From positions 6,300,590 through 6,364,589 of the forward strand of contig NC_069000.1 of assembly GCF_001194135.2 (NCBI RefSeq): a DNA stretch of 64,000 nt, read 5' to 3'. Source of the DNA: Octopus bimaculoides (lineage: Eukaryota). The first letter of the stretch is position 1. Each line of letters opens with the position of its first letter. The translations under genes were made by a program, and so were the position numbers. Shown in pieces: positions 5,737 to 58,751 of the stretch. The notes below the pieces were generated by a model. The model made no database searches, was not told the origin of the DNA, and saw nothing but the letters and a program-made list of their open reading frames with translations.

Positions 5737-5821
<85 letters not shown>

Positions 5822-5856
5822 CTCTTTCTCTCTCTTTCTCTCTCTCTTTCTCTCTT

Positions 5857-5915
<59 letters not shown>

Positions 5916-6980: not shown

Positions 6981-7021
<41 letters not shown>

Positions 7022-9083: not shown

Positions 9084-9135
<52 letters not shown>

Positions 9136-10937: not shown

Positions 10938-10976
<39 letters not shown>

Positions 10977-13900: not shown

Positions 13901-16900
13901 CATCATATGATTTATCTTCTGAGACACCTAATATTAGTAAGTAGATTTTAATTATACTTTTCTCTGCTTGCATTTGCTGTCAATTTTTTTTTCCTCTCTT
14001 CTATAGTTTCTCACATAACATCAGTTTCTTACATCATTTCCGTTTTACTACATTTACATGAGTCTAGTGGAGGCGCAATGGCCCAGTGGTTAGGGCAGCG
14101 GACTCGCGGTCATAGGATCACGGTTTCGATTCTCAGACCAGGCGTTGTGAGTGTTTATTGAGCGAAAACACCTAAAGCTCCACAAGGCTCCGGCAGGGGA
14201 TGGTGGCGAACCCTGCTGTACTCTTTCACCACAACTTTCTCTCACTCTTACTTCCTATTTCTGTTGTGCCTGTAATTCAAAAGGTCAGCCTTGTCACACT
14301 GTGTCACACTGAATATCCCCGAGATCTACGTTAAGGGTACACTTGTCTGTGGAGTGCTCAGCCACTTGCACGTTAATTTCACAAGCAGCCTGTTCCGTTG
14401 ATCGAATCAACTGGAACCCTCGACGGAGTGCCAACAACAACAACATGGGTCTAATTGCCTGTACTAAGCCTTTCTCTGCAAGTTTTTTTATTAACATTGT
14501 ATTATCACACCTGACCTTTGACCTTGCTGTTTTCTCATTCTACCTTTGCTGCTGCTGCTACTACAATGAATTCTGTTCCTCAGAGGTAGCTGGCTCTATA
14601 CTCCCACAATCAACCCCAACCTTCCCACCTGTGTATTTCCTGAAGTTGTTTAAGCTTCAATTACATCTCAACCTCACCTGTAGCCGGGAAAGTTTTACAA
14701 AGGTCATTGGACACAGTCACTTCCTCCTGATTAAAAAGTGTATGTGTGGATATGTGGATCACAATTTTAGAATTGGTGCACTGGGTCTCTTCATGGCCAA
14801 AGAGGGGACTAAAAGAGTTGGCAGCAGGGAAAGTATCAGCCTATGAACCAGTGTCACAGAAAACGTGTTCAGCCAGTGCCAGCGTGAGAAAGAAACAGGA
14901 GGGGGAGAGTTTCTGATAGGAAGAGTATGTGCTTGAACCTAATTGAAATTGAGTGGTGTGGATAAAAATGGACTAGAAAGATGATTTTATTGCCCCCCCC
15001 CCCTCTCTTTCTTTCTCACACGCACACACACACATACACATACACCTGCCTTGTTCATTTGGGAAAATACTTTTCATTGTTAACTTTGCTGTTGAATTTC
15101 AGGAAAACCATTTGATGTATTCATTACCTCAGATAGATATGGAACCAGTCCGCATAGTTACCAGGTGACTTGGGATAAACCCCGCACTGGTGGAGCAGAT
15201 ATAGTGTCCTATTCAATTCAATACAGAAAGGTAAAGAATTCTCTTGATGTTTTTCAAGTTAACATTTTCCATGTTTGGTTTCGTTGCTTTCTTGGTGTTT
15301 AATTTCTAGATCAACTTGCAAGTGAGTAAACTACAGTGCATATGTGGGTCTGTGTTTTGTATATATGTGTAAGTATGCATTGCATATGTGTATGCGTATG
15401 TGTGTGTGTGTGTGTGTATACATATGTGTATATGTACACATATAGGCATTGGTAGTGTGTTTAAGAAGCTTACTTCTTAACCATGTGGTATCGGGTTCAT
15501 TCCTACTGTGCAGTATCTAGGACAAGTTATTTCACTGTAGGCCCCGGCTGACCAAAATCTTTATCGATTTTATCTCGATGAATTTTGAGAATAATGAAGA
15601 ATTTGTTTGAAAAACTTTGTCATTAGCAAGCTTTTGGAACATAAATTGATGTAAAATTTTGAGGGAAGGTTTTAATTTAGATCACTTTAAAATGGGATGT
15701 TTGTATTGCAGAAACTGGGGTGGCCTCAGAAAGTGTGGGTATCAAAAGGGTACAATGTTGTAGCATGTTTTTACTTTTCTGTTTTGTAGTTCTCGATGCT
15801 GATAGTTCGACAGTATCTTTTGATTTATGGATGTGTTTTGAAAATTAATTTGTCATGAACACTTCTTCCAATTTTCTTTGTACATTTTTTTTCCTCCCAT
15901 TGGCAAGTGGTGATATTTGAACTTTGCAAACTTTTTTTAAATTTTTTTTTTTTTTCTTTTTTTACCTTTGACATACACAGGTTCATATAAAAGAAAAAGA
16001 GCCCTGGGTAGTTGACGGCAGTAAGGAAAATGGAGACTATATGACAAAGACTGTTCAAGGAAAGACCTCTGCAGTAATTAGAAACTTAGAGTCTAATACA
16101 TACTATGAGTTCCAGGTCGTAGCTACTAATAAAGTTGGAAACTCAAATCCACGGCCTGTGATTATTGTGACAAAAAAAGGTAAGCTTTACCTTTTTATTT
16201 CTTCATAATATTGGTTAAATGTGTTAGTTTCCCCGCCATTGTCTTTTGCTGGAAATGTTGTTATAAAGGTTATATTTAAAATAGTTATCTCCTGTTTGTT
16301 GCATGTACTTATAAAACTGAATATTTGACATTAGATTCCAACACAGTTTTTATTTATCATCATCCAAGTATTATTTTCTGTTATTTAATGTTATTTATGT
16401 TATTTATTTAAATTACTGTATTTAAAAATGTTCTATTTAGTTTACAATTGATTTGATTTTGAGCTGTGATGTTAAATGTTTTGGATTTGAAATACACAAA
16501 TAAGAATTTCATTAAAAATAGATTTAATAATTTCAGCATTGAAAAATTGTTTTGCATGTCTATGTATGATATATGTAGCATGTATTTTAGGCCTTTGTTA
16601 CTTCCTGTTTTAGTGTAAAAAGAATTTAAAAAAAAGAAAAAAGGAAAAGAAAAATTAGTACTACAACACAGTAACTAAGAAATATATTTTTAGCTGTTTA
16701 TCAAATTTAAAAATGAAATTGTTCCCACTTTTTTTTCATATTCATATAGATTCACCTGATAGTATTGAAGAATCTGGTAAGAACTATAACACAATTGAGG
16801 GAATTATAAATTCTTCTTCAAACCATTCTTTACCTCTCTTGCTAAATTTAATGAGCACTTGTTCCTGCAGGCATTTCCTTCTGGTACCTGAAAAAAAAAA

Positions 16901-19900
16901 AATATAAAGATTTATCGTTGGTTTATATATTCTCCTTAAGTTTTTATCAAATGTTGTACTTTTAATCTATTTCTCTTCTCTCAAAGGTCTTTTGGGCATT
17001 TTATTTATTTATACATTATTATTATTATTATTATTATTAAGGAAGTGGGCTGGAATGACAGAATGCATAGCAGTATTTCTTCTGACTCTTTAGATTTTGA
17101 GTTCACATCTCACTCAGATCAACTTTGCCTTTCATCTTTCTAGTCTTTTTTAAATAAACCAGTTGAGGACTGGAGTTGAAGTAATAAATCCCACTACAAA
17201 AATAAAAATAAAAAATCAGGCGTTGCGTCTATTGTGGAAAGAATCGTTGTCTATCATTTAAATGATTGATCAGTTGATAGTTAATAAGTTTTAAAGGAAC
17301 TTTACCTTCTAATACAGTAATATTAAACGTTGTTGTTGTTGTTGGTGCTGCTGCTAGCTGGCATGATTATGTATTAGAACTGTTTAACTATAAACATAAT
17401 TGCCTCCTCTTAAACTTCTAAGCTAATTTGGTGCTCCATTGATGGTATTCTATCTTGATTTGCTGTTAGTCAAATGTCAGCCTTGTCTAGGTTGGTTGGT
17501 TGGTTGGTTGGTATGCCAATGATGGAATATAGAGTGGACATATCCCAAAATCACAGGAACTCTCTATTGCTTAGCCAATGGTGGAACGTAGGGTATGAGG
17601 TCCACTGAAGACACTCTGATTGTCAACCAAAGCCTCACACTGAATGCCTTACCATTTTTCAAAGTCAGTCTTTGATGTTTGGACAGGATTCTTATTTAGA
17701 AGAATTTAAACTCTAGTCACTGTCTTCAGTTCCCAATTGTTTTTTTTTTTTTTTTTTAGATAAACTGATACATATCAAAACAGCTTTTTCTAGTATATTG
17801 TAATCTTGTTTGCCCTGTCACAATGTCTATGAGCAGTTTTCAAACCTGTTGAAAACAAAGAGAATGATTTATTTTAAGTGAATCCACCTTGCAGATTAAA
17901 GCTGCAAAATACATAAATAAGTCCAATGTAGATAGTGGAAAACTGATGAGAGTACTACTCCTTACTTTGCATTTCAAGTTCTGTTTATTAATATCTCAAC
18001 TAGGTATCTTTATATCTCAGCTCATTTTTATTTAGAAATTTACCTTTTTATATAAATATTTATCCTTTCTGTAAGAATGGCTTCAGGGACACAAAAAATT
18101 ATGGAACTGAAGTAGAACTCTTGCACATTTCAGTGTTGCCTAAATAATTGTTAACAAAAAGCATATTAGAATTGGTTTTTAATTAACCCATAAAGCGCTG
18201 GGATTTGCACTTACATAGCAAGGACTGCTGAGCACATTTTATGAAAATGAGACTACCATGCAAACATAAAAAAAGACAACAAAAAACATATCTTCTTAGT
18301 ATATAATGGTGGCAAGTTTTACATCATCTGAAAAGTCATTAGTTGAACTATTAGTCCTCTTGCATTCTGGTGGGGGGTATTGGAGCGTTTGAGTGACATT
18401 AGACCCCAACAAACGCCCATAAATTAAATGCATCTATCTGGGCCACGATCGTGGCCCGTTGCGCTTTATGTGTTAAGCCTAATAAGATTATTAGGCTTAC
18501 TGACTTGCTGTTTATTTAGATAATTTTTTTACTGAATTTTAAATAACAGCTTTGTTCTTTTTATAGAGTAAACTTTAAAATAATTTTTAATTTGCGCAAT
18601 TTCTTCTATANNNNNNNNNNNNNNATATATATATATATATATAAAAAAAGAAAAAAATATTTCGCTTAAGTGAATCTTGTTTTGCATACTGTGTGGAATT
18701 GTCCTTTTTTTTTTTTTTAACATTTTTTTTTTTTAATGATGAATATTAATTAGAAATTTTTTCACTGCTGCTTACTCTTACTTCAAACCATGTCATCATG
18801 CTTGTGTTACGTGTTTTATTAAATGTTGTCTTATTTGTATTTTTTTTTTTTCTCTCTTTAAATGAACCCATTTTTATTGACATTCCAATAATTATATTAA
18901 ATTTAAATTTAAGGTGGCATACTTAATTCAAAAGTTTTCTTCATTAAATAGTTTTCATTTATTTTCCACTATTTCTAAACAACCCAATTGATTGACTGAA
19001 GTCTACAATTTATTTTAGAAATACACTTGTTTGTATATTTTTACTCTGCAGAATATCCAGATGAATATGTAGATGAATATGGTAAGCTCACTGTGCACCT
19101 TACAAACACCCCAGATAATATACCCCTCCGACCACCTTGTTCATCTAAAGTTGCTTTAAGCACTCCACATAATTTGGCTGTTATTACCAATATGAAGCAC
19201 CAGAAATACCTAGAACTGGTGGTGCTCAATATTTATTGGGGAAGATTTTAAGCTAAATGCATAAAAAGTTTTAACATTTTTCAGTTTTATTTAACAGCTA
19301 AATTGGAATCACTGAATTTTTAAAAAAAATTTTATGTTCTCATTTTACAGCAATAGAAACATTTATTTCATGTATTTATTGGTTTAATCTTTTCTTTTTT
19401 TTAATCTTTCCTCCTTTCTCTGTGTGTTTGTGTATTGCTAAATGTTTCTATACTTACCTTTTTTTTCTAGATATATAATTCTTGATATTGGCTCTCCTAC
19501 TGGTTCCAAGAAAGGACTTTGTTGTTTTATTTTATATTTTTTTAAGGAAACCCCTCGAGTAATTCTTTCCCCATTACTTGCAATAGACTCTACTTGACTG
19601 CTTCAAGTAAAACTGAACTTTCTTGCAATTTGCATGTCTGAATGTGCAAGGTTATAGCAACTGACCTAACATTTTAATCATATTTTGCTCCAGATAAGTG
19701 CTAGAGTAAATCAACTTAAGATCAGAGCTGTTTCAGATATTAGTGTCTTGGATTATATAATGTCCAGAGGGCTGTTTTCAGAAACATTTCAATGGATTTT
19801 GTTTCTATTACAACATTGGGGATGTGATTTAAGGGAGATTTGGCTGTTGTTTCTAACAGGTTGAACTATCATCCCTTATTTAAACAGTTGTACCTTTTGG

Positions 19901-22900
19901 TCAGAAAGATGGTACCGAGTGGCCATCAGTAGGAATATGCAGCACTTAGTGAAGCATTTTATTTTTGATATACAATAAATGTAAAAGTGATCTTCTGATT
20001 GGTTTGGTTACTTGGTTAATATTGTTAGTGTGTGTCTTCCACAAACATTTGTCCTCTTAACATAAACTTCACGGTAAACTCAGTGTGACTTGACATTGAA
20101 GTTGAGGCTCTTTAAAATACATGTACAGACCCCACTTGTTACAGATGCCACATGATGGTAGAGAACTGTAGATTTGATTGTAATGTGAATCATTAAATCA
20201 TTTCAATATACCTGCACTCTATGAAGCACAGTTCAGTGGCATTACATGAACTCGAACCATTCAGCTTCTTGTCTGATTTCCTTTGTATGCATTTGGTTAT
20301 TTGCTGCTTCTTTAAATAAATTACACACTCGTGAAATCAGAAGTTTGTAATATACGCTTCTCAACATGGTGAGATAAACCAGCTTCTTTACAATGTCCCA
20401 CATTATTTTGAACTTTCACCTCCATTATATCACATTGCATGGATCATCCCTTGTTCATTCATAGTATATCATTTTATCAACATATCTTTATTAGATCTGC
20501 CTGACTCTCATGAGAAATCATCAACTAAGAATTTTAAAGGCTCTTGCATGAGATCCCAGTTTATATAACAATCACTCTTTGTTTGTCATGTGCATAGTCC
20601 AGTATATAACTTTTTCCTAGTCTTCTACATTGTGCCACAAATCAAAATTCCTAAACTCCTTGAACAGTAGATTCTTGATTGTTTTCTTGACAGTTTTTCA
20701 ACTGCTTCATTAGTTCGAATGCTGTGTTATCCAACACTTCTCTCCCAATACGATGGTGGTGTTTTGGTGAAGCTTCTTAGAAACAAATGCATCAACATCT
20801 TGAATGTATCATCTTCTGACAGCATCCAGTGACTCTTTATTCGAGTGTTTCTTGCATATTTTTATGTTGGCATTTCTTCTCCAATGACTTTTCTTTCATA
20901 TTTCACTTTTGTCTCAATATCTTTGTGTTGTGTGTGTGTATCGTAGTGAGAGGTGTGGTTAATTAAAGCAGTTTGATTGTCTTATCTTTTTTGGTATTAG
21001 TTATTCCATGATGACATTAGTGCTGTTCAGTGTTTTCATTCTCTCTTCAATAATCATATAAAATGTGATGGTAAAATTTTTTTTTTTTAATAATGGCCAT
21101 AACTATACCTGGAAATATTATAGAAAAAAAATAATAATCTTCACTTAGATAACCTAATTAAACCATTATCAGATTTAACTTTTAAGCCAAATTTCATGTT
21201 TGTTTGATAGGGTTTTTTTAAATAAAATATTTTATAGCTAATTATTTCTTATTAATTATCCTGCTGTCCATTACTTACAATAACAACCATTCATTATGTA
21301 AAGTGTTCATTCATCGACATTCCATTACTTTTCACTGACAACAATTCACTTTTGGTTCTGCAATATTTCAACTCTGCTTTGTACTGTCGACTAGTATATG
21401 TGTGTCATCTTCACTCTGATCTCTCCAATCATAAATGAAATAAAGATGCCCCTGGCTCATCAATCATTTCAGATCCATCACCTGCTGACACAGCATCAAA
21501 CCCGAAAACTAATATTTACAAGGCTACAACCAAAGGTTAGTTTGCAATAACTGTAATGGGAACCGTTCCTTGGTCCCTAACGGCTGCCAAACATTACAGA
21601 TGGCTAGTCTTGTCAGTCATTCATTCATTCATTCATTCATTCATCTATATTTGCTCATCTTCAGTCTTTTCTTTTATTTTCATTCAAATTTTGAGAGAGA
21701 AATGTTTCAAGCTTCTTTCGGTTTGGTCAGTGTTATAAAGATTTCACTTTCAAAACGAGGCAGCATGTTCCTAATTAATTCTGCTTCTTAACTCATTAAT
21801 CCACTTCATTAGCTTCTTTTTCTCTGAATATATCATATGAAGAATTTTTCTAGCTTTCATCCATCTTTTCACTTCAGAGTTTTCCATGACAAATTTCCAA
21901 GTAATACATTTCTATATTTGGTTAATTTCTCCTTCATTTTAAATTGAAGGTTTTAGAATATACTTAAATTAAGATTGTATTCCTCCTATCCAAGGACCTG
22001 GATACATTATGTTAATTTCCTTTTTTAAAAACCTAAAACAACTTCGGGAATATTGTCCCAATAACTTACCAGAATAATTGTATAATATGGTGACCTGGCG
22101 AGTTTATAGAATGGCATTGATGGGTGGAAAGTGTTTTTGGTTCCTGCCCTTCATTGAGTGTAGGGTAAGAAAAAGCTGGTTTACATTAGGCCCGTATCTA
22201 CTTTAATCTTTGTACAATATTATTAAGTCCCCCATCCCTTTTTTAAGGGCTTATTTGGAGTAAATCTTTCTGTAAGATTAAAACATAACGAAAATGCATT
22301 AGTCAGTCTTTATTGACAGGAAAACTCAATAACATTGTTTCTGGTTATGTTAGTAGTTAATTGCAAACTGTTTCTCTTTTCAGTTGGATAAGAAGTTACA
22401 ATTTCTTTTGTTAAAGAATTTTCTCTTTCTTTTTTTTATAAAAGTCTGCCAAATAGCTTTCATTTTTATATACATGTATATACAGGGTGCGATGGGTAAA
22501 TTGTCATTTTATAATCTCAATTTCGTGCATGCGCATTGTTTATGATTTTGTCAACTACACAGTATAGTAGGGTCAGTTGGGCACTCTGTGAGAAAAACAG
22601 CACAACAACACAGTTCACACTGCCAGAAATTTGGAAACAATATGCTGTACTGTTTGGGTGTCAGTCTGAGGACCTGTACCGAGAGTGATAAAAATCAAAC
22701 ATCCCATCAACATCATGGTGTTTGGAGTGATTACTAGTGATGGTGACGTTATGCCTCCATTCATCTTCCCACATAGCCTCAGACTCAACACGTAGGTCTA
22801 CATCAAGTGCCTGGAGGAGGTAGTGTTTCCTTGGGTCAATAGGGTGACTGCTGGAAGACCCTATGTCTGGCAACAAGAGTCTGCACCATGCCATACAAGC

Positions 22901-23320
22901 AGGAGAACCCAGTCATAGCTGTCAGACAATTTCTTTGACCACATCACCCCTAACCTAACACCCCAAACTGCAATCCCCCCTTGATTATTGTGTGTGGGGT
23001 ACAGTTGTGTGAGAGACCAACAAAACTCCTTTGAACTGAAGGCAAGGATTATGGCAGCATCTACCAACTTAAACAAGGAGACTGTCCAGAAGAGTTGCAG
23101 GAGATTCCGAAGTCGTGTGGATGCCATGGTTGAAGCCAATGGCAATTTTATTGAATGAATTTACTCGTTAGTATTTCAAGATATTTTTATGCAATTTTGG
23201 TAAATATATCTGTTAAAATGAGATGTTGGTGTTATTTTCATTTTTGGGTAATTTAGATGACAGTTTGTTCACCGCACCCTGTGTATATGATAAAGATTTA
23301 AATAAACTAATAGTTTAACA

Positions 23321-23396
<76 letters not shown>

Positions 23397-25634
23397 TTGT
23401 GTAGACATACATCAGTCAGAATTAATATTAAAAAACTAATTTCGAGATTGACAAGATTAAAGATTTAAATTCCATGGCTTCATTCAATTTTTGTGTGTCT
23501 GTCTGCATGCATGTTTGTATGTATACATATGTGTAAGTATGTATGTATTATACACACACACACACATCAACTATAAAAACAATAAAGAATATTGATTCAA
23601 ACATTGTTGTCAGCTGAATGTTATATTTGTGTATAGGAACAATCAGTCCTAAATTGACTGTATTCACTGCATGCATTACTATTTGTTGCACTGTTATATG
23701 TATGCATTGAATTTGAAAGCGTGTGTATATGTCTATAGATAGATATTAAGCTCTTGTTGAAAATATTTGCTCCTTATCACTTCAGTTCTAAATGAAATTT
23801 TTACCTCTGCCTTTTAAACTTATCACAAATATAAAACCTAGTTGTTTAGCCCTGAGTAAGTAGGCCTATGATCAGAGGTGTTCCAGTTATGCCCAACTCT
23901 TTCTCTTGTATGTTGCATATCTAGGACTACATTGACTAATGTCTCTCTATACTTTCTGAAGATAGTAGAGAGTAAGTTTGAAGGAGGTTTGCTTGCATTT
24001 TTAGCAGGTCAAGCAACTATGTAGAGGTGCTCTGTCAAATGTGATTGCTTATTTATTCACATTGTTTTGGTTTAATCATGCATTATCTTATAGCTTTGAG
24101 ATTTCAATTGTGTGACTGTTGATTTTTAGAATAGATTATATTTTGGGGTATTGTAATGGGAATGTATCTTAGCTTCAATAGTTTTGTGTGCACACATTTG
24201 TTCTGCTTTAAGATTAAGCTCTTTTAAATGTATTGAGCTCTTTTTGCATTATTTTTATAGCCAAATGTAGAATCTAGTGTTATATATCAATCAAATTTTG
24301 ACACATCATGAAAGTGAATTTAACAATTTAGTGTGTTGTTAAATAGTTCTGCAATGCAGATGATGTATATATTTTCTCACAAAATTCTGAGACTGCCAAA
24401 TATCTACTGCAAGAGAATCTTTATTTTGCTCTATAAAACTGCTCTGTTACTAACACACTCTCAACCTATTGATTGATCTGCTTAAAACAGTTCCATTATT
24501 TGTTCATATTTTCTGTTAACCCTTTCCACTCAATACTCATTGATTCCCACCTACTAAATAGGTGCCTTCCAAAGTTTTTAGTTATGAAAAATTGTTTAAA
24601 CTAGTCTACTTTAAAAAAAAAAATAATAATGAACAAACAAAAAAGTGCTATCATCTGGGCAGTCAGAATTTTGATATCTTAATGGCTTGAAATATTTAGT
24701 GTAGGAGTGCAAAGGGATTTTTTTCAATTTTTGGTTTAACAAACCTTTATTGCATGGTGTGTGTGTGTTTTTTTTTTTTTTTTTTTTGCTCTTTCTCTTC
24801 TCCCATTTGTTAACTGACTATAAGCTCAAACAATTCATTGCTTTATATTCTGAATTCTCTGCCATTGAAATTCTCTGTATGTGTGGTGTCAATTACTGTC
24901 TGTTAATTTTCATTATTGATTTTTGATGAGCCAATCCATTCACCTCATAAGGTTTCATTTCATTATTCGTGGATCAATTACTATATAATCCATCATTATT
25001 GCAATACATTTTCATATTTATACATTGAATTAAGAAATTGTTTTTCCAATTTCCAGCTGAAAGGTAGGTAAGTTGTTGAAGGCTAAAAGCTGTCTGATTC
25101 CTCTCTAGTTTCTTTGTTTTAATAAAATTACATTTATTTCTCTTCCAAATCAAAATATTTTCTAGCCTTATCAAACTGTCTTAATTTTGGAACTAGTTTT
25201 TTGTCTTCATATACCACTTTCCTACTTTAGAGACTTCATGTAGGAATATATTACTTAACACTTATCAAATAAGTGACTATAGTCAGTTTTTTGGTAAGTT
25301 AGCCATTAAATTATTTGATTTTCAGTTGTATGTACTTCTATTACAAAGAACACTCTCACCAACTTCCTTGTATTCTTCTACTCCTGATTTTTTTTCCTTA
25401 CAAACTTTGTTCCAAGTTGAGGCCTCATTTCAACATTTAATATCCTGAACTACTTGTAAGCTAATCATAACTGTAATGACATGTTTTTAATAACATTCCT
25501 CATCACCATTTTATGCTCATTTTGGGTTGACTTAGTTATCTCTAAAAGTATGTTGGCACATTTTAGTCTTCTGTTACCTTCTACCTGAAATTCATCCTTA
25601 AGGCATCAACTATCACCATTTCTTCCACCCCACC

Positions 25635-25666
<32 letters not shown>

Positions 25667-26500
25667 TTCCTCATACATATCACATGTTGCTACTGCCTTC
25701 TCTCTCTCTAGTACAATACAATCTCATTTCTTTTTTCTCAGCTCCTATATTCCATTGTTCCACCCCACCAGCAGTATGCATTCCATTCGTGTGTATTCTC
25801 CTCTTTTGTTTCTACTTTTTCCTCATTGTCAGCATTCATGCAATATTGCATTTTACACACAAGCAATATATAATCTCTTTTTCACAGCATTACCAACTGA
25901 GGCTCTTTCTTTTTTCTACCTTGTTTTTTTCCATAGTTACCTATGCTTTTGGAACCCCCACCTTCTCTGTTAAGAAACAGAAGCAGTCGGTTATTTGTAG
26001 GGAACCGCCCTTTGTTGGCTTCTTTTAGTTTTCTACCTCATAGATACCCTACCCCTCTATGTGTCTGAATTAACTACACTGTAGTTAGTACAGACACATA
26101 TCATCTCCGAGTACCACCTGCTCATCTTTATTTATCCAGTTGAGAGAAAATTGGTCTTCTTAATGCCTTGTTAAGCTTATTTCAACTGTAGAAAAATTGC
26201 TCTCTTTCTCTCTCTCTCTCTCTCTCTCTGAAGTCCTTAATTGTCACTACAATATTAACTTCTGTGGCTCTGAAAATTCTTTCATAAATTAACTGTTTTG
26301 AGAAGCTGTTTGACTCTCTCTTTTTTTTTTTTTTTTTTTTTTTTTCCTTCTCTCTTATTTCACACCACAATATCTCAATCAATGTACAGCTATTACTGAT
26401 CTTTCTTAAAATAGTTTCCTAATAATCAATGTGAAAATGTGTTTAATTTTAGACATTTGCAGTTTCAACAGTTTTCAATCATTTCTCTGAAACTAATCAA

Positions 26501-26534
<34 letters not shown>

Positions 26535-29027
26535 GCAACAAGATGGAGTTAACATGTTGTCTATTTGACTTGGTCATTGTTTGATCTTATCTAATTGTTC
26601 CAGCATTTTTTTGAAATTTGATTTATGTGCTGTTTTGTTTACTAGTGATTTGCTGCAAGTTATATTTTTCCTTTCAGGAAATATTTTAGATCCTGGACAA
26701 ACATCGAAATCCATAAGTGATTCAAGTGATTCTTTTTTTCTTTCTTTTTTTTTTGTTAATCTTGCCATTAAGTCTTTCTGTACTAATTTTCATTTATAGC
26801 TTTTGAATTGACAAAACTTTTCCATAAATTAATATATTTATCTCTTTCAAAACTTAATAATCTTTCTATTTTAATGATTCTTTGCACAGTAAGGAAGGAG
26901 GTTACAAGTAACATTTAGAATAAAACTTTAGTTTAAGCATGTCAAAATTGAAATACATATATATTTATATATGTATATATATATATACTGATTGGTCATT
27001 ACAATTTTCAAATATAATGGATTTTTTCTTTTTAAAGCCTATATAAATTTAATGGTTTTTCTCTCAATATAAATCTCCAATTTGTTCACTGATTTCATTG
27101 TCTATTGTACATTAGTTTCTGCTTAAGATGGAGGCATGTTTTAAAACCTGCAATTAACCATCATAAGGATGAATTGAGCTGTTTTTTAATTAATCATTAT
27201 AAATCTTAGTGATTTAATGTGGCAAGCTGGCAGAATCGTTAGCGTGCTGGACAAAATGCCAAGCATTTCTTTTGGCACTTTAAGTTCAAATTCTGCCAAG
27301 GTCAATTTTACCTATGATCCTTCCAAGATTGTTAAAATGAGTACCTGTCAAGTACTGGCGTTGGTGTAATGCGCGCACGCACACATTCTTCAGATTTGCT
27401 GGCCTTGTGCCAAAATAAGAAGTTTTTGACAACAGCACAAGTATTTGTCAGCATTTCCTTATGGTTTTATGTTTGTATATATTTTTTTAATGCTAATAAT
27501 GCATTTCAAATATTACTATATAAATAAGGATAAGATCCATATTTTAAATAGCAATCAAATCAAGTGACAGCATGAAAGTAAAAAAGAAACTATATAGGTT
27601 ATATAATAATTATAAAAATTTATAAATAAGGGTCTCGAAGAGATACTACCATGCTTGAAATAGCAATCAAAACCTGACTCTAAAACCACATCATGTATTC
27701 AAAATACAGCACAAGGTGAAAGGACAAATAGACAAATAAAACCAGAGGGTGTGAAATTATCCAATTTTTACTGGGATTGAATTGTTCGACTAAAGGTGCA
27801 TAGCTGCAGTCAAATGACTTAAACCAGTAAAAGAATTAATCTACACACACACACAACCAGTATTTTGTGATAATGGTATTGAAAGCAAAAGGGCGGCGAA
27901 CTGGCAGAATCGTTAGCACGCTAGGCGAAATGCTTAGCGGTATTTCATGTGTCGTTGCATTCTGAGTTCAAACTCCACCAAGGTCGACTTTGCCTTTCAT
28001 CCTTTCGGGGTCGATTAAATAAGTGCCAGTTACGCACTGGGGTCGATATAATCGACTTGACTTTGTTTGTCCCCTCTATGTTTAGCCCCCTGTGGGCAAT
28101 AAAGAAAAAAATGGTATTGAAAGCAAATTGATTTGGTAAAGTCCTGCCTCCATATTTTGTCCCCGTAGGCTAATTATTCAGTGCTTGTAATGTTGATGAT
28201 TGGCTCTTGGTCAAACCCGATCTAGCACGACTATGAAGATAGGTGTTGTAGTGTAGACACCACGGTACATTATGTTGTTCAGTGTGTCCTGTCCTTTTGT
28301 GACAGTACCAATGATCACTTGAACTTTGATCGTTTACGAAGTAGTGAATCACCTTCACTTCATTGTGTCTAAAGAACAAAATTAATTTGTGAAGTGTTGG
28401 ATGCATAACAATGTCAACAGAAGAAAATTGTCAAACCTTTTTGCTCAGAATACTGTGTACACACACACAGACATGAACCCACCCATATTGTGTGGTTAAT
28501 ATGGTAACTTTGCAGCTACGTGGTTCTGGGTTTAATCCCACTGAGTGGCACCTTAGATAAATGCCTTGGGCCAACCCATCCCTTGTGAGTAAATTTTGTA
28601 GATAGAAACTGTGTGGAAACTTATATATGTATATTGCGTTTGTACCTGCACTGCTTGACGGCCTGTGTTGATTTGCATCTCTGTAATTTAGCATTCAGTG
28701 AGAGAGAGTGTTGAAGTACCAGCCAAAAAATACGTACTGGGGAGGTCGATTTGTTAGATTAAATCTTTCAAAGCAGTGCTCCAGCATGGGCTGAAGAAAG
28801 TTCAGAGAGTTGTTACAGATGTTGGTAACAAAAGGTGTGAAACAAATTGTACGATGCTTGTGTATGAGCAGGTTTGCTACGAGGTAGTGAAATGTGAGGC
28901 CAGACTGCAGGAGACTTGTGGAGATTAGAAATAAAGCTAGCCTTCTCCACTGGACATGCAATGGCCATGCGCATGGCTGAAAATTATAAATACTAGGTTG
29001 AGGAAAAAGTTTGTGTGCTGTGTTGAT

Positions 29028-29066
<39 letters not shown>

Positions 29067-32000
29067 AAGACTTTATTCAAAAACAACTACTATTCTTTAA
29101 AATAAAGACCATCATTTTCCATGACCTTCTGCTAATGATCTGCAAGCTTTCAGATTTCGTTAAAATACCAATCCCTTGGCTTTGAATTGAAAAATTCTTG
29201 ACAGGCTTCTTCAACTTCATTGAATGACTCAAATCGGTGACCTTTCATAAAGTGCTGCTTTGATCGGAAGAGACCATAGTCAGATGGAGCAATGTCTGGA
29301 CTATAGGCTGGATGCGGCAGAACTTCCACACCGTCCAATTCTTCAATCTTGTTACTGGTTTTTCTGATGGTCTGCAGTTTGCATTGTCTTGTTGAAACAA
29401 AGCGCGTCTTCGAATATAGTGAGTCACCATTGAACACGGTGATATGAGCTGAATGAACACACACACACACACCACAAAAATATATTAAAAAAGCATTATT
29501 TTAACACAGCACACAAACTTCTTCCTCAGCCTAACATGTTGAGAGAAAGATTAGGCATAAAAAGGATTGGAGATCGTGTGCTGGTATACATATGGCCAAG
29601 GAAAGCCATATTCATCTACAGCCCTTTCTAATCATCCCTCATTCCTCCATATATTCTTCCAGCCTCAGCCTCCCTACCATTCCGTTCTTGTCTGCCCCCA
29701 CTAACCTTCATCTCCCAGTTCTAGCTCTACCCTAATTACTCCCAATCACCTCTTCAACAGTGAGAAATTTGTTCCTGTCCAGTCTTTCGTACTTCTGAAC
29801 ACTTCAAGAAGTGGGAGGCTTAGAGGTCCCTCATTCACCTTGTATTGACAATGGCCCTTTGAGTGCTCAACACCATTTGTTGGATAAATATATTTGTAAA
29901 TATATTTATTTTTGGATTATCAATTCTACTATTGGTCTCATTAGTGTAATATCCACATGCACATGCTCATTCACAGACATTTCTCCATAAATACCAATAA
30001 ATGTTTTCAAGATATCCTCTCGATCAGTATAGACAGAAGCTTTTTTGCTTTTAGCCATTTAAATCTGCCATTGCACCTTTCCTATACTTCAGCTTTAATA
30101 CGGTGATGAACTTTTTCAAAGTTGTTTTCTATTTGACATTTGTTTTTTAAATCTACAAAAACCTTAAGTTTGGTCTACTTGGGTTTTACTTTTTTTACGC
30201 ATGCATCTATTTTTTTTTTCAACTTTCCATTGAAATCGTAATATTTTGTTTTTAATATTTTATAATACCCAATTTTACATTAGTAACCCTTAGCTGGTAT
30301 TTTTTTTTTTTTTTTTTTCTCCACTCCGCCACTATTATCTCTCTCTGCCTTCTCTAACATTTTGGCATCTCGCATCTTCAAGATAGATGAATCAATTTCA
30401 GTGACATGTTAAAACCCTTTATTTTTTGTACAGGTCCATCTTTTTCCACTATGAGCCCTTCTACTAAGAGCCCTACTAGTATCAGTGACGTAAGCTCTAG
30501 CTCAACACGTGACACTACTGTCACTGTGACCAATGTTGTAACTTCAGTGACCACTGGTGAAAAGCTGTTACATTGTTTTTTTGCATGCTTGAAACCACAT
30601 CTACTTATAATTTATCTGTCTTTTTTAATATTTTCAAACCTTTTATCTACTTACTGTTGTAAATATATCTCTCTCTTAGACAGTGACACTTCGTTTCATC
30701 CTGCTTCTCTTTGTCCACTTGAAAAGAAGCTTTTTCTCTCATTTTTGTCTTTCCAAATTAATCCCTGGATTCGTCCATTTTCTCCTCAACACTAACTACA
30801 GTTTTATTAATCATTCATTTCTAGTTCACACACTCGTTTCTCTTTGTTTCTTATTTGGTCCGACCAATGAATTCTGACTTCTCTCTGATATGTTCATGCA
30901 GTCTTTGCATCACCCATCTTCTACACATACACACGTGTCTGTGTGTATATGATTTGTTGTGACTCCAGCCCCCTACATTTTCTCACTAATGATAGGAGTA
31001 AGACTTCATTTTTAATGATTTCAGCTATTGAAATTGTCTTAAATATTTCTTAACTCTCTTTCTGACCTTTTTTTTTTTTGTTTTTGTTTTTATTTAAATG
31101 GCGAATATAATGTATTGATAATGAAATTTCCCAATTGTGGCTTCACTGCTGATTTGATCATGTCATTGTTAATATTATTATTACCATTATTATTATTATT
31201 AATCATTGCTTACTCTTGACTTGTGATGTTTCTCCCTCAGTCAATCTCTTCACAAATTAAACGTTTACCGAATGAACTTTCATATTAATGTTCTACTTCA
31301 TCTGTACTACTACTACTACTACTATGATGATGATAATCATAATTATGCATGCCTGGCTCATTTCTTTTTCTTTGTCTGTCTGTCTTGTTTGTCTTTTTTT
31401 TATTTTTGTATGTTTTTCCTTTTTGTTTTTAATATTCAGTTTCACTAACTGTGTACATATTTACTACTACCTGTATTTTTTAAATGTCTCCGTTTCACTT
31501 AACATTCTTTACATTAGTAATAAATGGTGAGGATTGTTATTCAATGCTGTTATACAATTTGCTTGGGTTGTTAGAATTGTGTGTGTGTGTGTGTGTGTGT
31601 GTGTATACCATATTTGCCAGTGTGTAAAGATGCAGTTTTTTATTTTTAAATGTATAAAAAAAAACTTGCTCTGCATCTAATGCAGTCGTACTATGTATGG
31701 AAGGCCAAGAGTTGTGTGTTGTAGGCTCGGGAACTTAATGAGCATAAGTCTGCTGGGCACAATAATTGTTACCCATAAAATATTGAAAACCGGCCAAAAT
31801 ATCACAAACTGTTAACACAAATTTGTGGGAAATTGCTTACAGCAATCAGCAGTTATAAATGAAGAAGTCTCATCCTTTCCGATCTCGTTCCTCAGCATAC
31901 GTAACTCGCACCTGATATGTGATTTACATTTTACTTAATGGCTGTTGTTTTTAAGAACTTTTCTTTAAATTGGTCTGAATGAAAGGTGAACGGAATGTTA

Positions 32001-34422
32001 AACTTTCATCTGCCTGTCAGCTGTGTGCAGTGAGTTGATGACAATATAAAAATTGAAATATTTGCAGGAACGTGGTTTACTCATGTTAGATATATGGCTT
32101 CATATTTTATTCCATTGTACTGTCGCAGAATCATATTTATATGCACACACAATCAATACACCTTTTCCCCTACAAAACCACTTTAAGATATCTTTCAGTA
32201 ACGTATGATGAAACATACTAAATCTCCCCCACACACAAATTACCTTTTTTAAAATAGGAGTGTGTTTTATATGCAGGCAAATATGGTATATCTTGTGTAT
32301 GAATCAAGTGGTTGCTCTTGTCACAAATTACATTTCATGGGCAATGTCTTAACCATTTATTGAATATTTAACATTTCCTTTCTGAAAGTTGCATGTGTGT
32401 AACATATATGTGTAATGTGTGTGTAAAAACTTTTCTCTTTCCTTGCAAATGTTTCGAATCTTATTCTACTAAAACTCCTGTTTTCCAACAATGGATTGGA
32501 ACAATCCTCAGAGCACTGCAGTATTTCTTTCTGCTCTCCACATTTTTTTTCTAACTTGCAATCAATGATGGGCCTGGGATGATTTAATTTTCACTTAAAT
32601 CTTACATTGTGTGGGCAGACGGTGGTGGTGGTGGTGGTGGTGGTGGTGGTGGTGCTTATTTCTCTTCTCTTACTCCTTCCTCTCTCTGTTTCCTCTTTCT
32701 GCTACTCACCTTCTGGTGGGAATTTTAGGTATCTGTAAGGTCAAAGAGCTATTATTTCTGAGAAAATGGAGCAATTTACATTTGACACAAGCATTTATTG
32801 TAAATGACATCTGGTTAAGTCAGTCACTCGTCATCATCATCATCATCAGTAACTTTTCTGTATTTTAAGGACATAATGTTAATGATGGTGCAGCCAATAG
32901 CAACCTCTCCCACTTGCCCTCTCATTCTCTTGCACCCCTCTCTCTCTCTCGAATCTCTAGGAATCATTCAGGTTTGATGAGAGAGAGAGAGAGAGAAAGA
33001 GAAATGTGATTTAGATTGTGTGTTTGATAGTTTAGGTATATTTCATCATTATGTTGAAAAAGACAGTTTGCTCTGACCCAGAAACTAGACACAGTATCAG
33101 TCTACAATCTGATAATCAAACAGTCGTTGTTCCACCCACCTTTTCCTCCCTTCTGTTTTTGAATCATACATCATGGCAGCAGTATGCTGATAATGGTATT
33201 ATGTCTTCCGTCTTTTGGGAAATTGTGAAAACGATGACCTTTTTGAAAGATTTAAACTAAAATTTATAAACAGTTTTCACGTTGCTTAAGTGACTGTCAC
33301 TGCTGTGTGTGTGTGTATGTGTGTATATATGTATATATATATATATGTATGTATGTATGTATATAGTGATGCTCGGTCAAATTTGTTTGTGCAAGTATAA
33401 TTGGATTGGACGTGTATTTATTGAAAGCAAATTTGAGGATCTTTTCATTTCCCTGAGGAGACAACAGTTTGTGTAAAAATCAAATTGATTTTAAGTTTTA
33501 AGTTTTTGATGCTTTTGAGTCCTGCCAGTCAGTTGTGAGTAAACAGATCTATGACCAAAACATGAACCATGTTTGATGCATATTGATATTAAAGATACTA
33601 TATTGCNNNNNNNNNNNNNNNNNNNNNNNNNGGGGGGGCATGTAGCAGAACATTGAACTAAGGAATACCACAAAGTACTTTACATTCCATGTAGAAAACA
33701 GCTTTATATTCCATGTTGCAGAAGAATATACAGAACTGAAGAATATCCAAAACTGTTTTGCTTTATGTAGTAGAACATAGTTTTGTTATTATTAAGGCAG
33801 TGAGCTGGTAGAATTGTTAGCATGCCAGGTAAAATGCCTAGTGGTATTTCATCTGTCCTTACATTTTTGTGTTCAAATTCTAGTATGGTCAACTTTACCT
33901 TTCATCCTTTCAGAGCTGATAAAATAAGTTCCAGTGAAGCACTGGGGGTTGGTGTAAACAACTGACCCCATTCCCTCAAAGTTGCTTGCCTTGTGTCCAC
34001 ATTTGAAACTTATTATTATTAAGGAATACAGAAAATTACTTTACATTCCTTGTGGCAGAACATTGGACTATAAAATATGTTTAGAAAGAAATAATTTGGG
34101 GAAGTTTGGACCATGTAAGTGTTGTTGGTCAGCTAACAGCACCACCATTTACACTGCTTGCTGTAGAGAATATGGGCCCCGTGAAAGAGGTACAGGATGA
34201 CCATGAAGAAAGAGGTTGGAAGATGGTGGGAGAAAATGAGGTTGATAGAGTGACAGTGAAAGACAGGAGGAAGAAGAGGCAGTTGTCTTTTTGTTGGGGA
34301 CTTTACAAACTACCTGGGTTATTGATCTTGATTGATTGATTTCTAATGATGTTATGGTTGTGCTCGAAGTGGAGAGAATTTATTTGGGAATGTTGGGCCT
34401 GGTTGATGATAGAGAACCAATT

Positions 34423-56599: not shown

Positions 56600-57070
56600 T
56601 CACACCTAGTGCGCACGTATCTGAATCTCTCAAACTAAGCAGCAAAAAAAGGTTGGTGAGATTTGTGAAACTGGTGTTTTAGCTTTGGAGATATAATCAA
56701 TATTTGCTTTGTATGTCTGCAAACCTCATCAGTCAATCTTGTTTGATGTTCTAACTTCACATCCTTCATTTTCGAAAATGTTTGCTCACAGACACAAGTT
56801 GTTCCAAACACTGATGCCATCCATACCAGCGGCGAATGAACTCTTTTCAAATTTATTTCTACATCCAGACGGGTCTCCTAATACATTCTTCTGAATGGCA
56901 CTTTGTATCTCCTTTTTGGGATGCATATTCAACTGTTTCTTTGCAGGTGTGTCCCATTATTTCCTCAGTAAAGCATAACTTGAAGATGTGAACAGGCTTA
57001 CTTTCATTTTCCTTTTATGTTCTTTATAATTGCAGGTTCTAATTTAAATACCTGGTCCTGGCATGTCTGG
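56600..57070 (-). mobile_element. hAT transposase C-terminal (dimerization domain) relic
   Basis: ORF 56635-56850: SVFGTTCVCEQTFSKMKDVKLEHQTRLTDE matches the hATC pattern S.FGSTY.CEQ.FS.MK..K...R.RLTD. Confidence 0.7.
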
Positions 57071-58751
57071 AAATTTTTCTCTATTATACACAAAGTCTTC
57101 AGTTTTCTATCCTTTTCTTATGGAGGCCAATAAGAAATTCAATTGGTCCACTATCACTCTCTATTTTCTGTGCTTTGTCCAAGCACACCACAACCGTTAT
57201 CTCTAGGATTTGCTGGCACCTCTTCATAAGCATTGCCTGCGTCATCTTTATCTGAACCTTGACCATCATTTGGGACATGCAAAACAATTTCAAATTCTTG
57301 GTTTTGGAATGCTTACATACTTCAATGATGTTCAAAGTTTCTTCTGTGTCCCTCTCGATGTTAAGACTCTCTTTGCTATTATTATATGGGAAATGAAACG
57401 AAGCAGTTATAAAAATGTTTTTATTTAGCAATTAAGTAATAGACCCATAAATATATTTACTAAATAAACACAACAAATAAAGTAAAATAGGTAAAAAAAA
57501 ATAAATACGTGAAATAGGAATTCTATAATATTCTAAAATGAACATTCCGATTCCCAGCTTATGATTTATCATATTCAAGGGAAAAACATTTAAACTAAAA
57601 TTTTTTTGGTTGAAATATCATTTAAAGTTAAAAGACAATTTGTTGAATTAAAAATATTAACGTTTGAGATTCTGTATTACTAACAATATACAAAGCATAA
57701 ACTTATCATCTCTAAAGCTCACTCGAGCAGATCAAAATAACTACTGAAGGAAAAGTTCACAGCAAAATGTTAAATGAAATAAAATATCACAAGAGTTTAA
57801 ATTTTAAAATGAAAGGTTGAGTGGTTTAATTTTTTAAATTATTTTTCTTTGGTAAGGTTTTCCATATGATTCATCATATGTTAGGCACATATCATACATT
57901 GAGCATTCCCTAATTAAATCCAGTGAAATCCCAGAAAAACAAAATCTTATGCTGGCTTTCCTTTAGTACTACTATAATGTATGGGAAAAGGAGCATTTAG
58001 TTAGATTTATCATAATGGGCAGGACCTGTGAATATTTCACGGAATAAATGGTAAACTTATTGGGTTACTTCTGAAAGCTTCATCCAAAAACCTGTAAGTG
58101 TAGCCTGTATTGTGCCCTGTATCAAAAGATGGTCGCTCATCTGCTTATCGTTGAAAAATGAAGGAAATTGGAATACGATGATTCCTTAATGCACAATTCT
58201 ATACACTCAATACACAACACTCTCCTGCTCTCTCACACTTTATCACACCTTCTTTTCTCTTTCCTTTTTCTTTCACTCTTTGCTTTTCCCTTCAACAAAT
58301 CACATGAAAGCATTACAGACAGGCCAATAAGTAATGGTGGCGGGGGTGGGGGGAGAACTTAGTTAAAAAAAAGTCTACACATTTCACTCACCACCTCCCC
58401 TCCCATCTCCACCCTCTACCATTCCCGCTCATCCCCATCCCTCCCCCTTCAACTAATCACATGGAAGTGTTACGGATAGGCTAAGTAATGTAGCAACAAG
58501 CAGAATTATTATAAGATTTCTATACAAGAAACATTGAAAAAATTCACTCATCTAAAACTTTACCAGTTTGGGCCATAAAAGTGCATTTATTGTAGGGTCA
58601 GTATTTTGGAAATCATGGAATTTTTATTTTTTTTATTGTTCCCTAAAAAAATCAGTTTNNNNNNNNNNNNNNNNNNNNNNNNNNNNNNNNNNNNNNNNNN
58701 NNNNNNNNNNNNNNNNNNNNNNNNNNNNNNNNNNNNNNNNNNNNNNNNNNN

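What the first reader, a model, noticed from the sequence alone, without database searches (positions are those of the whole stretch)
16750..32029. Combinatorial cassette of phase-1 micro/mini-exons building a variable stalk between FN3-2 and the GPI anchor
Seen: the ~26 kb between the last FN3 exon (ends 16179, phase 1) and the GPI exon (starts 42212, phase 1) holds at least five small exons (27, 30, 63/90, 39/48, 123 nt) plus a 9-nt candidate. All are phase 1->1, multiples of 3 and stop-free, so any subset keeps the frame. That gives 32 or more stalk variants, adding 0 to ~110 aa, with acidic, Tyr-rich and mucin-like chemistry. Established: vertebrate NCAM1 uses small alternative exons (VASE in Ig4; MSD1a-c and AAG between the FN3 domains), and Fas2/apCAM vary mainly in anchor type. 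I do not know of a described juxtamembrane microexon array for this family. Inference: a splicing-based control of adhesion distance, glycosylation and shedding in cephalopod neurons. Strongest candidate for an undescribed system in this window.
Basis: partly seen in the sequence, partly recalled or inferred. Interest (0 to 1): 0.8.

Follow-up and report, generated by a model that had tools for sequence, protein, structure and literature searches.

The report
Alternative stalk mini-exons in octopus NCAM

Summary
The window is the Octopus bimaculoides gene that RefSeq calls "neural cell adhesion molecule 2" (5 Ig + 2 FN3). All five main candidate exons map exactly to peptide blocks that are present or absent in the 12 RefSeq isoforms X1-X12: 16750-16776 (27 nt), 19052-19081 (30), 21473-21535 (63), 26678-26725 (48) and 30434-30556 (123). 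The 12 isoforms differ only in this cassette and in the terminal exon.

O. sinensis has the same five exons, with a 39-nt form of the 48-nt exon. Argonauta hians has three, with a long form of the 63-nt exon. Cuttlefish and a second decapodiform show stalk variants in assembled mRNA contigs.

The 9-nt candidate has no support. The assembly gap at 18611-18624 is intronic and affects no reading frame.

- The cassette feeds both the GPI exon and a transmembrane exon that lies beyond the window.
- Only 10 of the 32 possible combinations are annotated, and their use looks patterned by anchor type.
- The exons have been in public models since the first genome annotation.

Vertebrate NCAM1 exons 12A-D (the muscle-specific domain) are a close precedent. 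Function is inferred only: a disordered stalk carrying acidic/Tyr (likely sulfation) and mucin-like modules.

The parts
15981..16179 (+). Last constitutive extracellular exon (second half of FN3-2). It ends in phase 1 (...VIIVTKK + G).
   Evidence: Gene model. Pfam fn3. 100% tblastn match to RefSeq tails X2, X9 and X12 at 16116-16178.
16750..16776 (+). e27: 27-nt cassette exon, phase 1->1, peptide (D)SPDSIEES. Acidic and Ser-rich.
   Evidence: Exact peptide mapping. Present in Ob X1, X2, X5, X7, X9, X10 and absent in X3, X4, X6, X8, X11. Ob vs O. sinensis 8/8; vs Argonauta 5/8.
18611..18624 (.). Assembly gap (14 N) inside the intron between e27 and e30. Not part of any exon.
   Evidence: flanked by TTCTTCTATA and (AT)n. 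Isoforms Ob X9 and Os X11 join e27 to e30 directly.
19052..19081 (+). e30: 30-nt cassette exon, phase 1->1, peptide EYPDEYVDEY. Three Tyr, each preceded by Glu: a candidate tyrosine-sulfation module.
   Evidence: Present only in Ob X9 and Os X11, both with e27 and the GPI exon. Ob vs Os 9/9; Argonauta has EFPDDYLDEY, 6/9. Cuttlefish transcript has ...EEPEYPEEEVVLDED.
21473..21535 (+). e63: 63-nt cassette exon, phase 1->1, peptide (D)PSPADTASNPKTNIYKATTK. A possible alternative or ancestral acceptor at 21446 would give 90 nt.
   Evidence: Present in Ob X2 and the older model, and in Os X1, X2, X3, X5, X9, X10. Ob vs Os 19/20. The Argonauta exon GPSIISDSSTDDSTSDPKSNVYKASS aligns to 21454-21531, E = 3e-7.
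26678..26725 (+). e48: 48-nt cassette exon, phase 1->1, peptide (G)NILDPGQTSKSISDS. It ends in A, so the next split codon reads Ile. A second identical donor after 26716 gives the 39-nt form.
   Evidence: 9-nt direct repeat AGTGATTCA/AGTGATTCT. Present in Ob X2, X4 and the older model. O. sinensis X1-X5 carry the 39-nt form ENNLDPEEPSKSI. In both species it occurs only with the TM exon.
30434..30556 (+). e123: 123-nt cassette exon, phase 1->1, 41 aa, 23 of 41 Ser/Thr. Mucin-like.
   Evidence: Present in Ob X1, X3, X7, X8 (with both TM and GPI) and in Os X8. Ob vs Os 25/40 with a 3-aa indel. Composition. GC 0.455 against 0.30 in the flanks.
42212..42317 (+). Coding part of the GPI-type alternative terminal exon (VDTGSRITDSTASFISNSHLLMAVNAFLCCLLALL*). 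It enters in phase 1.
   Evidence: Terminal exon of Ob X7-X11. 31/34 identical to O. sinensis. A 402-N gap starts 68 nt after the stop codon.
57036..57133 (+). Third alternative terminal exon, used by RefSeq isoform X12 directly after FN3-2 (GSNLNTWSWHVWKFFSIIHKVFSFLSFSYGGQ*). Its significance is unknown.
   Evidence: No counterpart among the O. sinensis isoforms.

Best explanation
Shown. The window holds most of the Octopus bimaculoides NCAM/Fas2/apCAM-family gene (RefSeq 'neural cell adhesion molecule 2'). In the 26 kb between the last FN3 exon and the GPI-type exon lie five phase-1 cassette exons of 27, 30, 63, 48(39) and 123 nt.

Each can be included or skipped without changing the frame. 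The transcript then ends in one of three ways: the GPI-type exon at 42212, a transmembrane plus cytoplasmic exon set beyond the window, or, in one model, a third terminal exon at 57036. In O. bimaculoides all annotated isoform diversity comes from these choices.

The cassette is old. The same exons occur in O. sinensis and partly in Argonauta. Cuttlefish mRNA contigs show analogous present/absent stalk segments.

Inferred. The cassette encodes an unstructured juxtamembrane stalk whose length (0-50 aa in the annotated O. bimaculoides forms) and chemistry are set by splicing:
- e27 + e30 form a strongly acidic patch, with three Glu-Tyr sites that fit the tyrosine-sulfation pattern.
- e123 is a mucin-like Ser/Thr block, probably O-glycosylated and extended.
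- e63 and e48 are Pro/Ser/Thr-rich spacers.

This would change how far the Ig/FN3 ectodomain stands from the membrane, its local charge and its accessibility. Inclusion appears restricted and linked to anchor type rather than freely combinatorial.
For: Identity and architecture:
- Pfam finds 5 I-set stretches and 2 fn3.
- The window exons match XP_052831192 (X1) exactly.
- In GCA_001194135.2 the gene range is 118 kb.

The exons are real and alternative:
- 12 RefSeq isoforms share an identical N-terminal 704 aa and differ only in these five blocks and the terminal exon.
- Every block maps to an AG...GT-bounded interval in the right order.
- The split-codon residue changes exactly as phase-1 junctions predict. 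In Ob, Val becomes Ile after the A-ending e48. In Os, the residue is His, Gln or Leu after a C-ending FN3 exon.

Conservation:
- O. bimaculoides vs O. sinensis: e27 8/8, e30 9/9, e63 19/20. Compare 84% for the whole ectodomain and 79% for FN3-2.
- Argonauta keeps e27, e30 and a long e63.
- Sepia pharaonis NCAM models and Logan mRNA contigs show stalks of 0, 21, 29 or 40 aa between FN3-2 and the anchor. The contigs include complete ORFs of 778 aa on a 2884-nt contig and 791 aa on a 2637-nt contig.

Stalk nature:
- Composition is given.
- AlphaFold on the Argonauta isoform gives pLDDT 22-29 and no secondary structure from the end of FN3-2 to the TM helix at 806-827.

The exons are single-copy within the window and lie outside its interspersed repeats.
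Against: - No RNA-seq junction counts or tissue data could be examined. For O. bimaculoides the support is RefSeq model isoforms, not reads I saw.
- Isoform models do not prove phasing of distant choices, so the apparent coupling to anchor type may reflect limited evidence.
- e39/48 and e123 are only 63-67% conserved between the two Octopus species.
- Sulfation, O-glycosylation, any effect on adhesion and neuronal specificity are all untested.
- Orthologous genomic DNA could not be fetched, so conservation of the flanking introns is unknown.
Confidence: 0.8

Rival explanations
1. Free combinatorial code. Each of the five (or six) exons is chosen independently, giving 32 or more stalk variants per anchor and up to about 110 extra residues.
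For: All exons are phase 1->1 and stop-free, so every subset is frame-compatible. Ten different subsets are already annotated across two species. Short-read-based models under-sample combinations.
Against: The annotated sets are patterned in the same way in both species. e30 occurs only with e27 and GPI. e39/48 occurs only with TM. e123 never occurs with e30, e63 or e48. No model has more than three cassette exons. The 9-nt exon has no support.
Confidence: 0.15
2. Splicing noise or annotation over-enumeration. One or two stalk forms are functional, and the other isoforms are rare by-products that the annotation pipeline turned into models.
For: I saw no read counts. e30 is in one model per species. 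The X12 terminal exon has no counterpart in O. sinensis. A crude splice filter shows many decoy exons in this intron.
Against: The exon sequences, lengths and phases are conserved between O. bimaculoides and O. sinensis at or above the level of the folded domains, and three exons are conserved to Argonauta. Independent annotation of two species gives the same patterned subsets. Cuttlefish mRNA assemblies also show forms with and without stalk inserts.
Confidence: 0.05
3. Chance open frames. The intervals are ordinary intron sequence that happens to be AG...GT-bounded, stop-free and a multiple of three.
For: Such intervals are abundant: 25 pass a crude filter in phase 1, 16-17 in the other phases, and more than a hundred pass without a filter. 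This does explain the 9-nt candidate at 32021-32029.
Against: All five larger exons are exact peptide blocks of RefSeq isoforms and have orthologues in other species.
Confidence: 0.01

Closest known systems
Vertebrate NCAM1 muscle-specific domain (MSD1; small exons 12A-D, also called a, b, c and AAG)
   Same: Both are a group of small, frame-preserving, alternatively spliced exons in the extracellular, membrane-proximal half of an NCAM-family protein. In both, the group is combined with every mode of membrane attachment (PMC2120321 abstract). MSD1 is described as a four-exon group (PMC2115936) and is linked to O-linked glycosylation by the title of the cited Walsh et al. 1989 paper. That parallels the Ser/Thr-rich e123.
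   Different: Position: from my own knowledge, the MSD exons lie between exons 12 and 13, that is between the two FN3 domains. The octopus cassette lies after FN3-2, next to the anchor. In chicken heart the MSD exons appear to be used as a single unit (PMC2120321), whereas the octopus exons occur in at least ten subsets. No acidic/Tyr module is known to me in MSD. Sequence homology was not tested, and independent origin is likely.
Drosophila Fasciclin 2 and Aplysia apCAM isoform sets
   Same: Same family and architecture (5 Ig + 2 FN3). Alternative GPI versus transmembrane terminal exons are a feature common to bilaterian NCAMs (PMC10084454). Insect fasciclin-2 is the nearest non-cephalopod hit (E = 9e-72).
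   Different: The seven Fas2 isoforms are described as differing at the C-terminus: TM forms with or without PEST exons, and two GPI forms (bioRxiv 10.64898/2026.05.24.727532). No multi-exon extracellular stalk cassette is described there. apCAM sequences could not be examined here.
Neural microexon programmes (Srrm/eMIC-dependent microexons)
   Same: e27 and e30 are microexon-sized, frame-preserving and highly conserved, in a gene of a family known for neuronal adhesion. e30 has cucUGCag directly at its 3' splice site, a feature reported for eMIC targets (PMC8797185).
   Different: UGC occurrence near the five acceptors is not above background. e63, e48 and e123 are larger than microexons. 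Neural-specific inclusion was not testable.

Membership tests
NCAM / Fasciclin-2 / apCAM family of IgSF adhesion molecules | Five Ig-like domains followed by two fibronectin type III domains | tested here: met
   Pfam on the spliced model: I-set in 5 stretches (E = 1e-60) and fn3 in 2 stretches (E = 5e-20). Only the signal peptide lies upstream of the window: the match to X1 starts at residue 21.
NCAM / Fasciclin-2 / apCAM family of IgSF adhesion molecules | Alternative GPI-anchored and transmembrane isoforms from alternative 3' exons | tested here: met
   Ob X7-X11 end in the hydrophobic GPI-type exon at 42212-42317. X1-X6 continue into a TM segment plus cytoplasmic tail. The TM exon is not in the window. 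GPI attachment itself is inferred from the sequence pattern; no predictor was run.
NCAM / Fasciclin-2 / apCAM family of IgSF adhesion molecules | Sequence similarity to named family members | tested here: met
   RefSeq names the gene 'neural cell adhesion molecule 2' in O. bimaculoides and O. sinensis. S. pharaonis records are named 'NCAM'. Insect fasciclin-2 hits at E = 9e-72 and 5e-74.
NCAM / Fasciclin-2 / apCAM family of IgSF adhesion molecules | Homophilic cell adhesion | not testable with these tools
   Needs cell or bead aggregation assays.
NCAM1 MSD-type small-exon cassette | Several small, frame-preserving, alternatively spliced extracellular exons | tested here: met
   Five exons of 27-123 nt, all phase 1->1, present or absent among the isoforms.
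NCAM1 MSD-type small-exon cassette | Located between the two FN3 domains (exon 12/13 junction) | tested here: not met
   The octopus cassette follows the last FN3-2 exon (16179) and precedes the anchor exons. The MSD position is taken from my own knowledge, not from a tool.
NCAM1 MSD-type small-exon cassette | Sequence homology to the MSD exons | not tested
NCAM1 MSD-type small-exon cassette | Ser/Thr/Pro-rich, O-glycosylated insert | tested here: inconclusive
   e123 has 23/41 Ser+Thr and 3 Pro. e63 has 6/21 Ser+Thr and 3 Pro. Glycosylation itself is not testable here.
Srrm/eMIC-dependent neural microexons | Length of about 30 nt or less, UGC close to the 3' splice site, neural-specific inclusion | tested here: inconclusive
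   Only e27 and e30 qualify by size. UGC lies within 30 nt upstream of 3 of the 5 exons, which is not above the background of 1.3 per 100 nt. No expression data.
Tyrosine-sulfation (TPST) substrate motif | Extracellular or luminal Tyr with acidic residues adjacent, no nearby basic residues or Cys | tested here: met
   EYPDEYVDEY has 3 Tyr, each with Glu at -1, 5/10 acidic and 0 basic residues. It is part of the ectodomain. The motif rule is from my own knowledge. Actual sulfation is not testable here.

The most novel reading that the evidence does not exclude
A stalk code shared across coleoid cephalopods and coupled to the anchor. Splice choices spread over about 14 kb would be coordinated with the 3'-end choice made 12 kb or more further downstream, so that each anchor type gets its own stalk chemistry. 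The acidic, probably tyrosine-sulfated microexon pair e27+e30 would be specific to the GPI form. e39/48 would be specific to the transmembrane form. The mucin-like e123 would exclude the others. The microexons are at least as conserved as the folded domains, which suggests they form a ligand- or partner-binding site rather than a passive spacer.
Probability: 0.25. Interest if true: 0.6.

Novelty: new variant of a known kind. Interest (0 to 1): 0.45.

Why it matters
NCAM-family proteins are central adhesion and plasticity molecules. Aplysia apCAM is the classic example for learning-related synaptic remodelling.

In O. bimaculoides, all annotated isoform diversity of this gene sits in a five-exon juxtamembrane cassette plus the anchor choice. 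Parts of that cassette are conserved from octopuses to argonauts, with analogous variants in cuttlefish.

This gives a concrete, testable handle on how cephalopods diversify a single-copy adhesion gene by splicing. It parallels the vertebrate NCAM1 muscle-specific domain, apparently by an independent route. The conserved Glu-Tyr microexon suggests a switchable sulfotyrosine patch, which to my knowledge has not been reported for this family.

The value is moderate. The exons are already in public annotation, and alternative small exons in neural adhesion molecules are a familiar theme.

Tried and rejected
- Word-indexed protein search with a composite of FN3-2 + stalk + GPI (224 aa) found nothing. 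The index evidently needs longer queries, because the same proteins were found later.
A single-exon query (FN3-2b) was used instead. It yielded the O. vulgaris orthologue among 150 mostly irrelevant FN3 proteins.
- Orthologous genomic DNA for an intron-level conservation test could not be fetched. The gene ranges are 118 kb (O. bimaculoides), 172 kb (O. sinensis), 176 kb (O. vulgaris) and 116 kb (Argonauta), all over the 100-kb limit. The shorter GPI isoforms are not on record.
- The TM and cytoplasmic exons were looked for in the window and are absent.
- The Argonauta-only block NSNVSHMLSVTIIDIKLSVPV and the cuttlefish stalk blocks have no convincing counterpart in the window.
- Regulatory motif counts (UGCAUG, YCAY, UGC, UCUU) around the exons were mostly at background. 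One UGCAUG lies 26 nt downstream of e123. YCAY is enriched around e63, but the downstream part of that is a (TCAT)8 microsatellite. I treat these as leads only.
- The self-comparison showed that the exons are single-copy and outside the SINE-like repeat family of the window.
- The transposase-like open frames at 22.5-23.2 kb gave no Pfam hit.
- Literature searches for cephalopod or octopus NCAM/apCAM splicing found nothing relevant. One meeting-abstract book that mentions both octopus and NCAM is not held as text.
- A source for the exon 12/13 position of MSD was not found, so that point rests on my own knowledge.


Full report
**What the window is.** The 64-kb window is AT-rich animal DNA with ten assembly gaps. 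Open frames on the + strand encode Ig and FN3 domains. I assembled 13 exons from 844 to 16179, all with AG/GT boundaries and compatible phases. The product has five I-set Ig domains and two fn3 domains.

An exhaustive search with the last FN3 exon found an 850-aa Octopus vulgaris protein, 'neural cell adhesion molecule 2 isoform X5'. Using that as query gave clusters for O. bimaculoides (13 sequences), O. sinensis (14 sequences) and Argonauta hians. The window exons match O. bimaculoides isoform X1 (XP_052831192) at 100% in most exons. The window is therefore this O. bimaculoides gene. In GCA_001194135.2 the gene spans 118 kb.

**The gap, tested first.** The 14-N gap at 18611-18624 lies 1.8 kb downstream of the 27-nt exon and 0.4 kb upstream of the 30-nt exon. 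It sits between TTCTTCTATA and an (AT)n run. No candidate exon touches it. RefSeq models in two species join the 27-nt exon directly and in frame to the 30-nt exon (O. bimaculoides X9, O. sinensis X11). The gap is intronic, so continuity of frame across it is not an issue. Whether a few hundred bases of intron are missing cannot be told from the window.

**The observation.** As bare criteria, 'AG...GT, multiple of three, stop-free in phase 1' prove nothing.
- A crude splice filter passes 25 such intervals in phase 1, 16-17 in the other phases and 5-6 on the other strand.
- Without the filter there are more than a hundred.

The test is external. After the shared ...VIIVTKK, the 12 RefSeq isoforms of O. 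bimaculoides differ only by the presence or absence of five peptide blocks and by the terminal exon.

| Exon | Coordinates | Peptide |
|---|---|---|
| e27 | 16750-16776 | DSPDSIEES |
| e30 | 19052-19081 | EYPDEYVDEY |
| e63 | 21473-21535 | DPSPADTASNPKTNIYKATTK |
| e48 | 26678-26725 | GNILDPGQTSKSISDS |
| e123 | 30434-30556 | 41 aa, 23 of them Ser/Thr |

The split-codon residue behaves as phase-1 junctions require. The TM exon starts with Val after G-ending exons and with Ile after the A-ending e48. In O. sinensis the FN3 exon ends in C, and the junction residue becomes His, Gln or Leu depending on the partner.

- The 39-nt form uses a second, identical donor created by a 9-nt direct repeat. 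It is the form annotated in O. sinensis.
- The 90-nt form is in no O. bimaculoides model. However, the Argonauta exon aligns across the upstream extension, to 21454-21531 (E = 3e-7).
- The 9-nt candidate at 32021-32029 is in no isoform of any species. I reject it.

**Conservation.** O. sinensis has all five exons.
- O. bimaculoides vs O. sinensis identities are 8/8 (e27), 9/9 (e30), 19/20 (e63), 8/12 (e39) and 25/40 (e123). The whole ectodomain is 84% identical and FN3-2 is 79%.
- Argonauta keeps e27 (5/8), e30 (6/9) and the long e63 (15/29), against 57% for the ectodomain.
- A final profile search found decapodiform relatives: Sepia pharaonis 'NCAM' models and Logan RNA-seq contigs.
- Those contigs carry complete ORFs on 2.5-3.0-kb contigs, so they are spliced mRNAs.
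- Between FN3-2 and the anchor they have nothing, or a 29-aa acidic block (KPPGSYDEEDEEEEEEPEYPEEEVVLDED), or a 21-aa block (NPLPVVTVPQQKENSNTDTNK), or a 40-aa Thr-rich block.

A variable stalk made by cassette exons is thus a feature of coleoid cephalopods. The acidic Glu-Tyr-Pro element is shared across them.

- The cassette is not tied to the GPI anchor. Six isoforms join it to a TM exon, (V/I)ENKEVPLTAAS..., that is not in the window. One model (X12) uses a third terminal exon at 57036-57133.
- The '32 or more variants, up to ~110 aa' figure is potential, not observed. Seven stalk compositions are annotated in O. bimaculoides, and ten across both Octopus species.
- The longest annotated stalk insert in O. 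bimaculoides is 50 aa.
- The same pattern appears in both species: e30 only with e27 and GPI, e39/48 only with TM, and e123 never with e30, e63 or e48. These are models, so the linkage needs long reads.
- The exons are already public. They are in RefSeq, and e27+e63+e48 are in the older model UPI00071C330A.

**How it most likely works.** The shown steps are exon skipping or inclusion in a uniform phase, combined with the choice of alternative terminal exon. The rest is inferred.
- The encoded segment is unstructured. AlphaFold on the Argonauta isoform gives pLDDT 22-29 and no secondary structure from the end of FN3-2 to the TM helix.
- e27+e30 give a 19-residue block with nine acidic and no basic residues. 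It has three Tyr, each preceded by Glu, which is the classic context for tyrosine sulfation in the secretory pathway (my own knowledge).
- e27 also has a Ser-x-Glu site.
- e123 is mucin-like, and e63 and e48 are Pro/Ser/Thr spacers.

Splicing would therefore set stalk length, charge and probably glycan load. That in turn would affect the reach and accessibility of the adhesive ectodomain.

Regulatory motifs were not informative: one UGCAUG 26 nt after e123, YCAY enrichment around e63 partly due to a (TCAT)8 repeat, and UGC not above background.

**Comparison with what is known.**
- NCAM family members across bilaterians make GPI and TM forms by splicing (PMC10084454).
- Fas2 isoforms differ in anchor and PEST exons (bioRxiv 10.64898/2026.05.24.727532).
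- The closest precedent is the vertebrate NCAM1 muscle-specific domain. It is a group of four small exons (12A-D), combined with each membrane-attachment form and linked to O-linked glycosylation by cited reference title (PMC2120321, PMC2115936).
- The octopus cassette differs in position (after FN3-2 rather than between the FN3 domains; the MSD position is from my own knowledge). It also differs in exon number and chemistry, and in its apparent sub-set use.
- I found no paper on cephalopod NCAM stalk splicing.

**Verdict.** This is a real, conserved, already annotated but apparently undescribed variant of a known kind of system. Interest is moderate.

Noticed in passing
window 57036-57133 (+): A third alternative terminal exon, used by RefSeq isoform X12 directly after FN3-2. 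It adds GSNLNTWSWHVWKFFSIIHKVFSFLSFSYGGQ and a stop. No counterpart exists among the 13 O. sinensis isoforms. It could be a truncated or secreted form, or an annotation by-product.
   Followed up: partly
window 42280 (inside the GPI-type exon): The O. vulgaris model CAI9737963 and the Sepia pharaonis models CAE1318100 and CAE1318102 splice the first ~18-22 residues of the GPI-type exon on into the transmembrane exon. In the window the matching site would be GCA|GTGAAT at 42280 (phase 0). RefSeq models and a decapodiform mRNA contig (P0300) skip the GPI exon entirely in TM forms. This may therefore be a gene-prediction artefact or a real internal donor.
   Followed up: partly
window 42385-42786: A 402-N gap begins 68 nt after the stop codon of the GPI-type exon. 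The 3'UTR and poly(A) site of the GPI isoforms are therefore largely unread. The first AATAAA/ATTAAA after the stop is at 42848, beyond the gap.
   Followed up: partly
outside the window (cytoplasmic exons); proteins P0178, P0153, P0292, P0300: A 33-aa acidic cytoplasmic insert (QETTLLTDKQQKE...GVTD) is alternatively present in O. sinensis. It is also present in the Argonauta and decapodiform TM forms, but in none of the 12 O. bimaculoides models. It is a second alternative region of the gene, reminiscent of the PEST and NCAM-180 inserts.
   Followed up: no
window 27890-28060, 33796-33947, 38060-38212, 53967-54145, 63652-63770, 63867-63995, 27221-27370, 17062-17185: An interspersed SINE-like repeat family of about 150 bp, with copies 70-79% alike. 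Several copies lie inside the cassette introns. None overlaps a cassette exon.
   Followed up: partly
window 22515-23155 (+): Open-frame fragments (e.g. ...RPYVWQQESAPCHTSRRTQS...) that looked to me like a decayed mariner/Tc1-type transposase, in the intron between e63 and e48. Pfam gave no hit for the four fragments, so this is unconfirmed.
   Followed up: partly
window 21613-21644 and 30582-30587: A (TCAT)8 microsatellite lies 78 nt downstream of e63; it is a YCAY cluster of the kind Nova proteins bind. A single UGCAUG (Rbfox motif) lies 26 nt downstream of e123. Neither is statistically compelling.
   Followed up: partly
whole gene, window 844-16179: Every intron at a domain boundary is phase 1, while the within-domain introns are phase 0, 1 or 2. 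This is the usual exon-shuffling layout of Ig-superfamily genes. It explains why any exon inserted between domain-boundary exons must be phase 1->1.
   Followed up: yes
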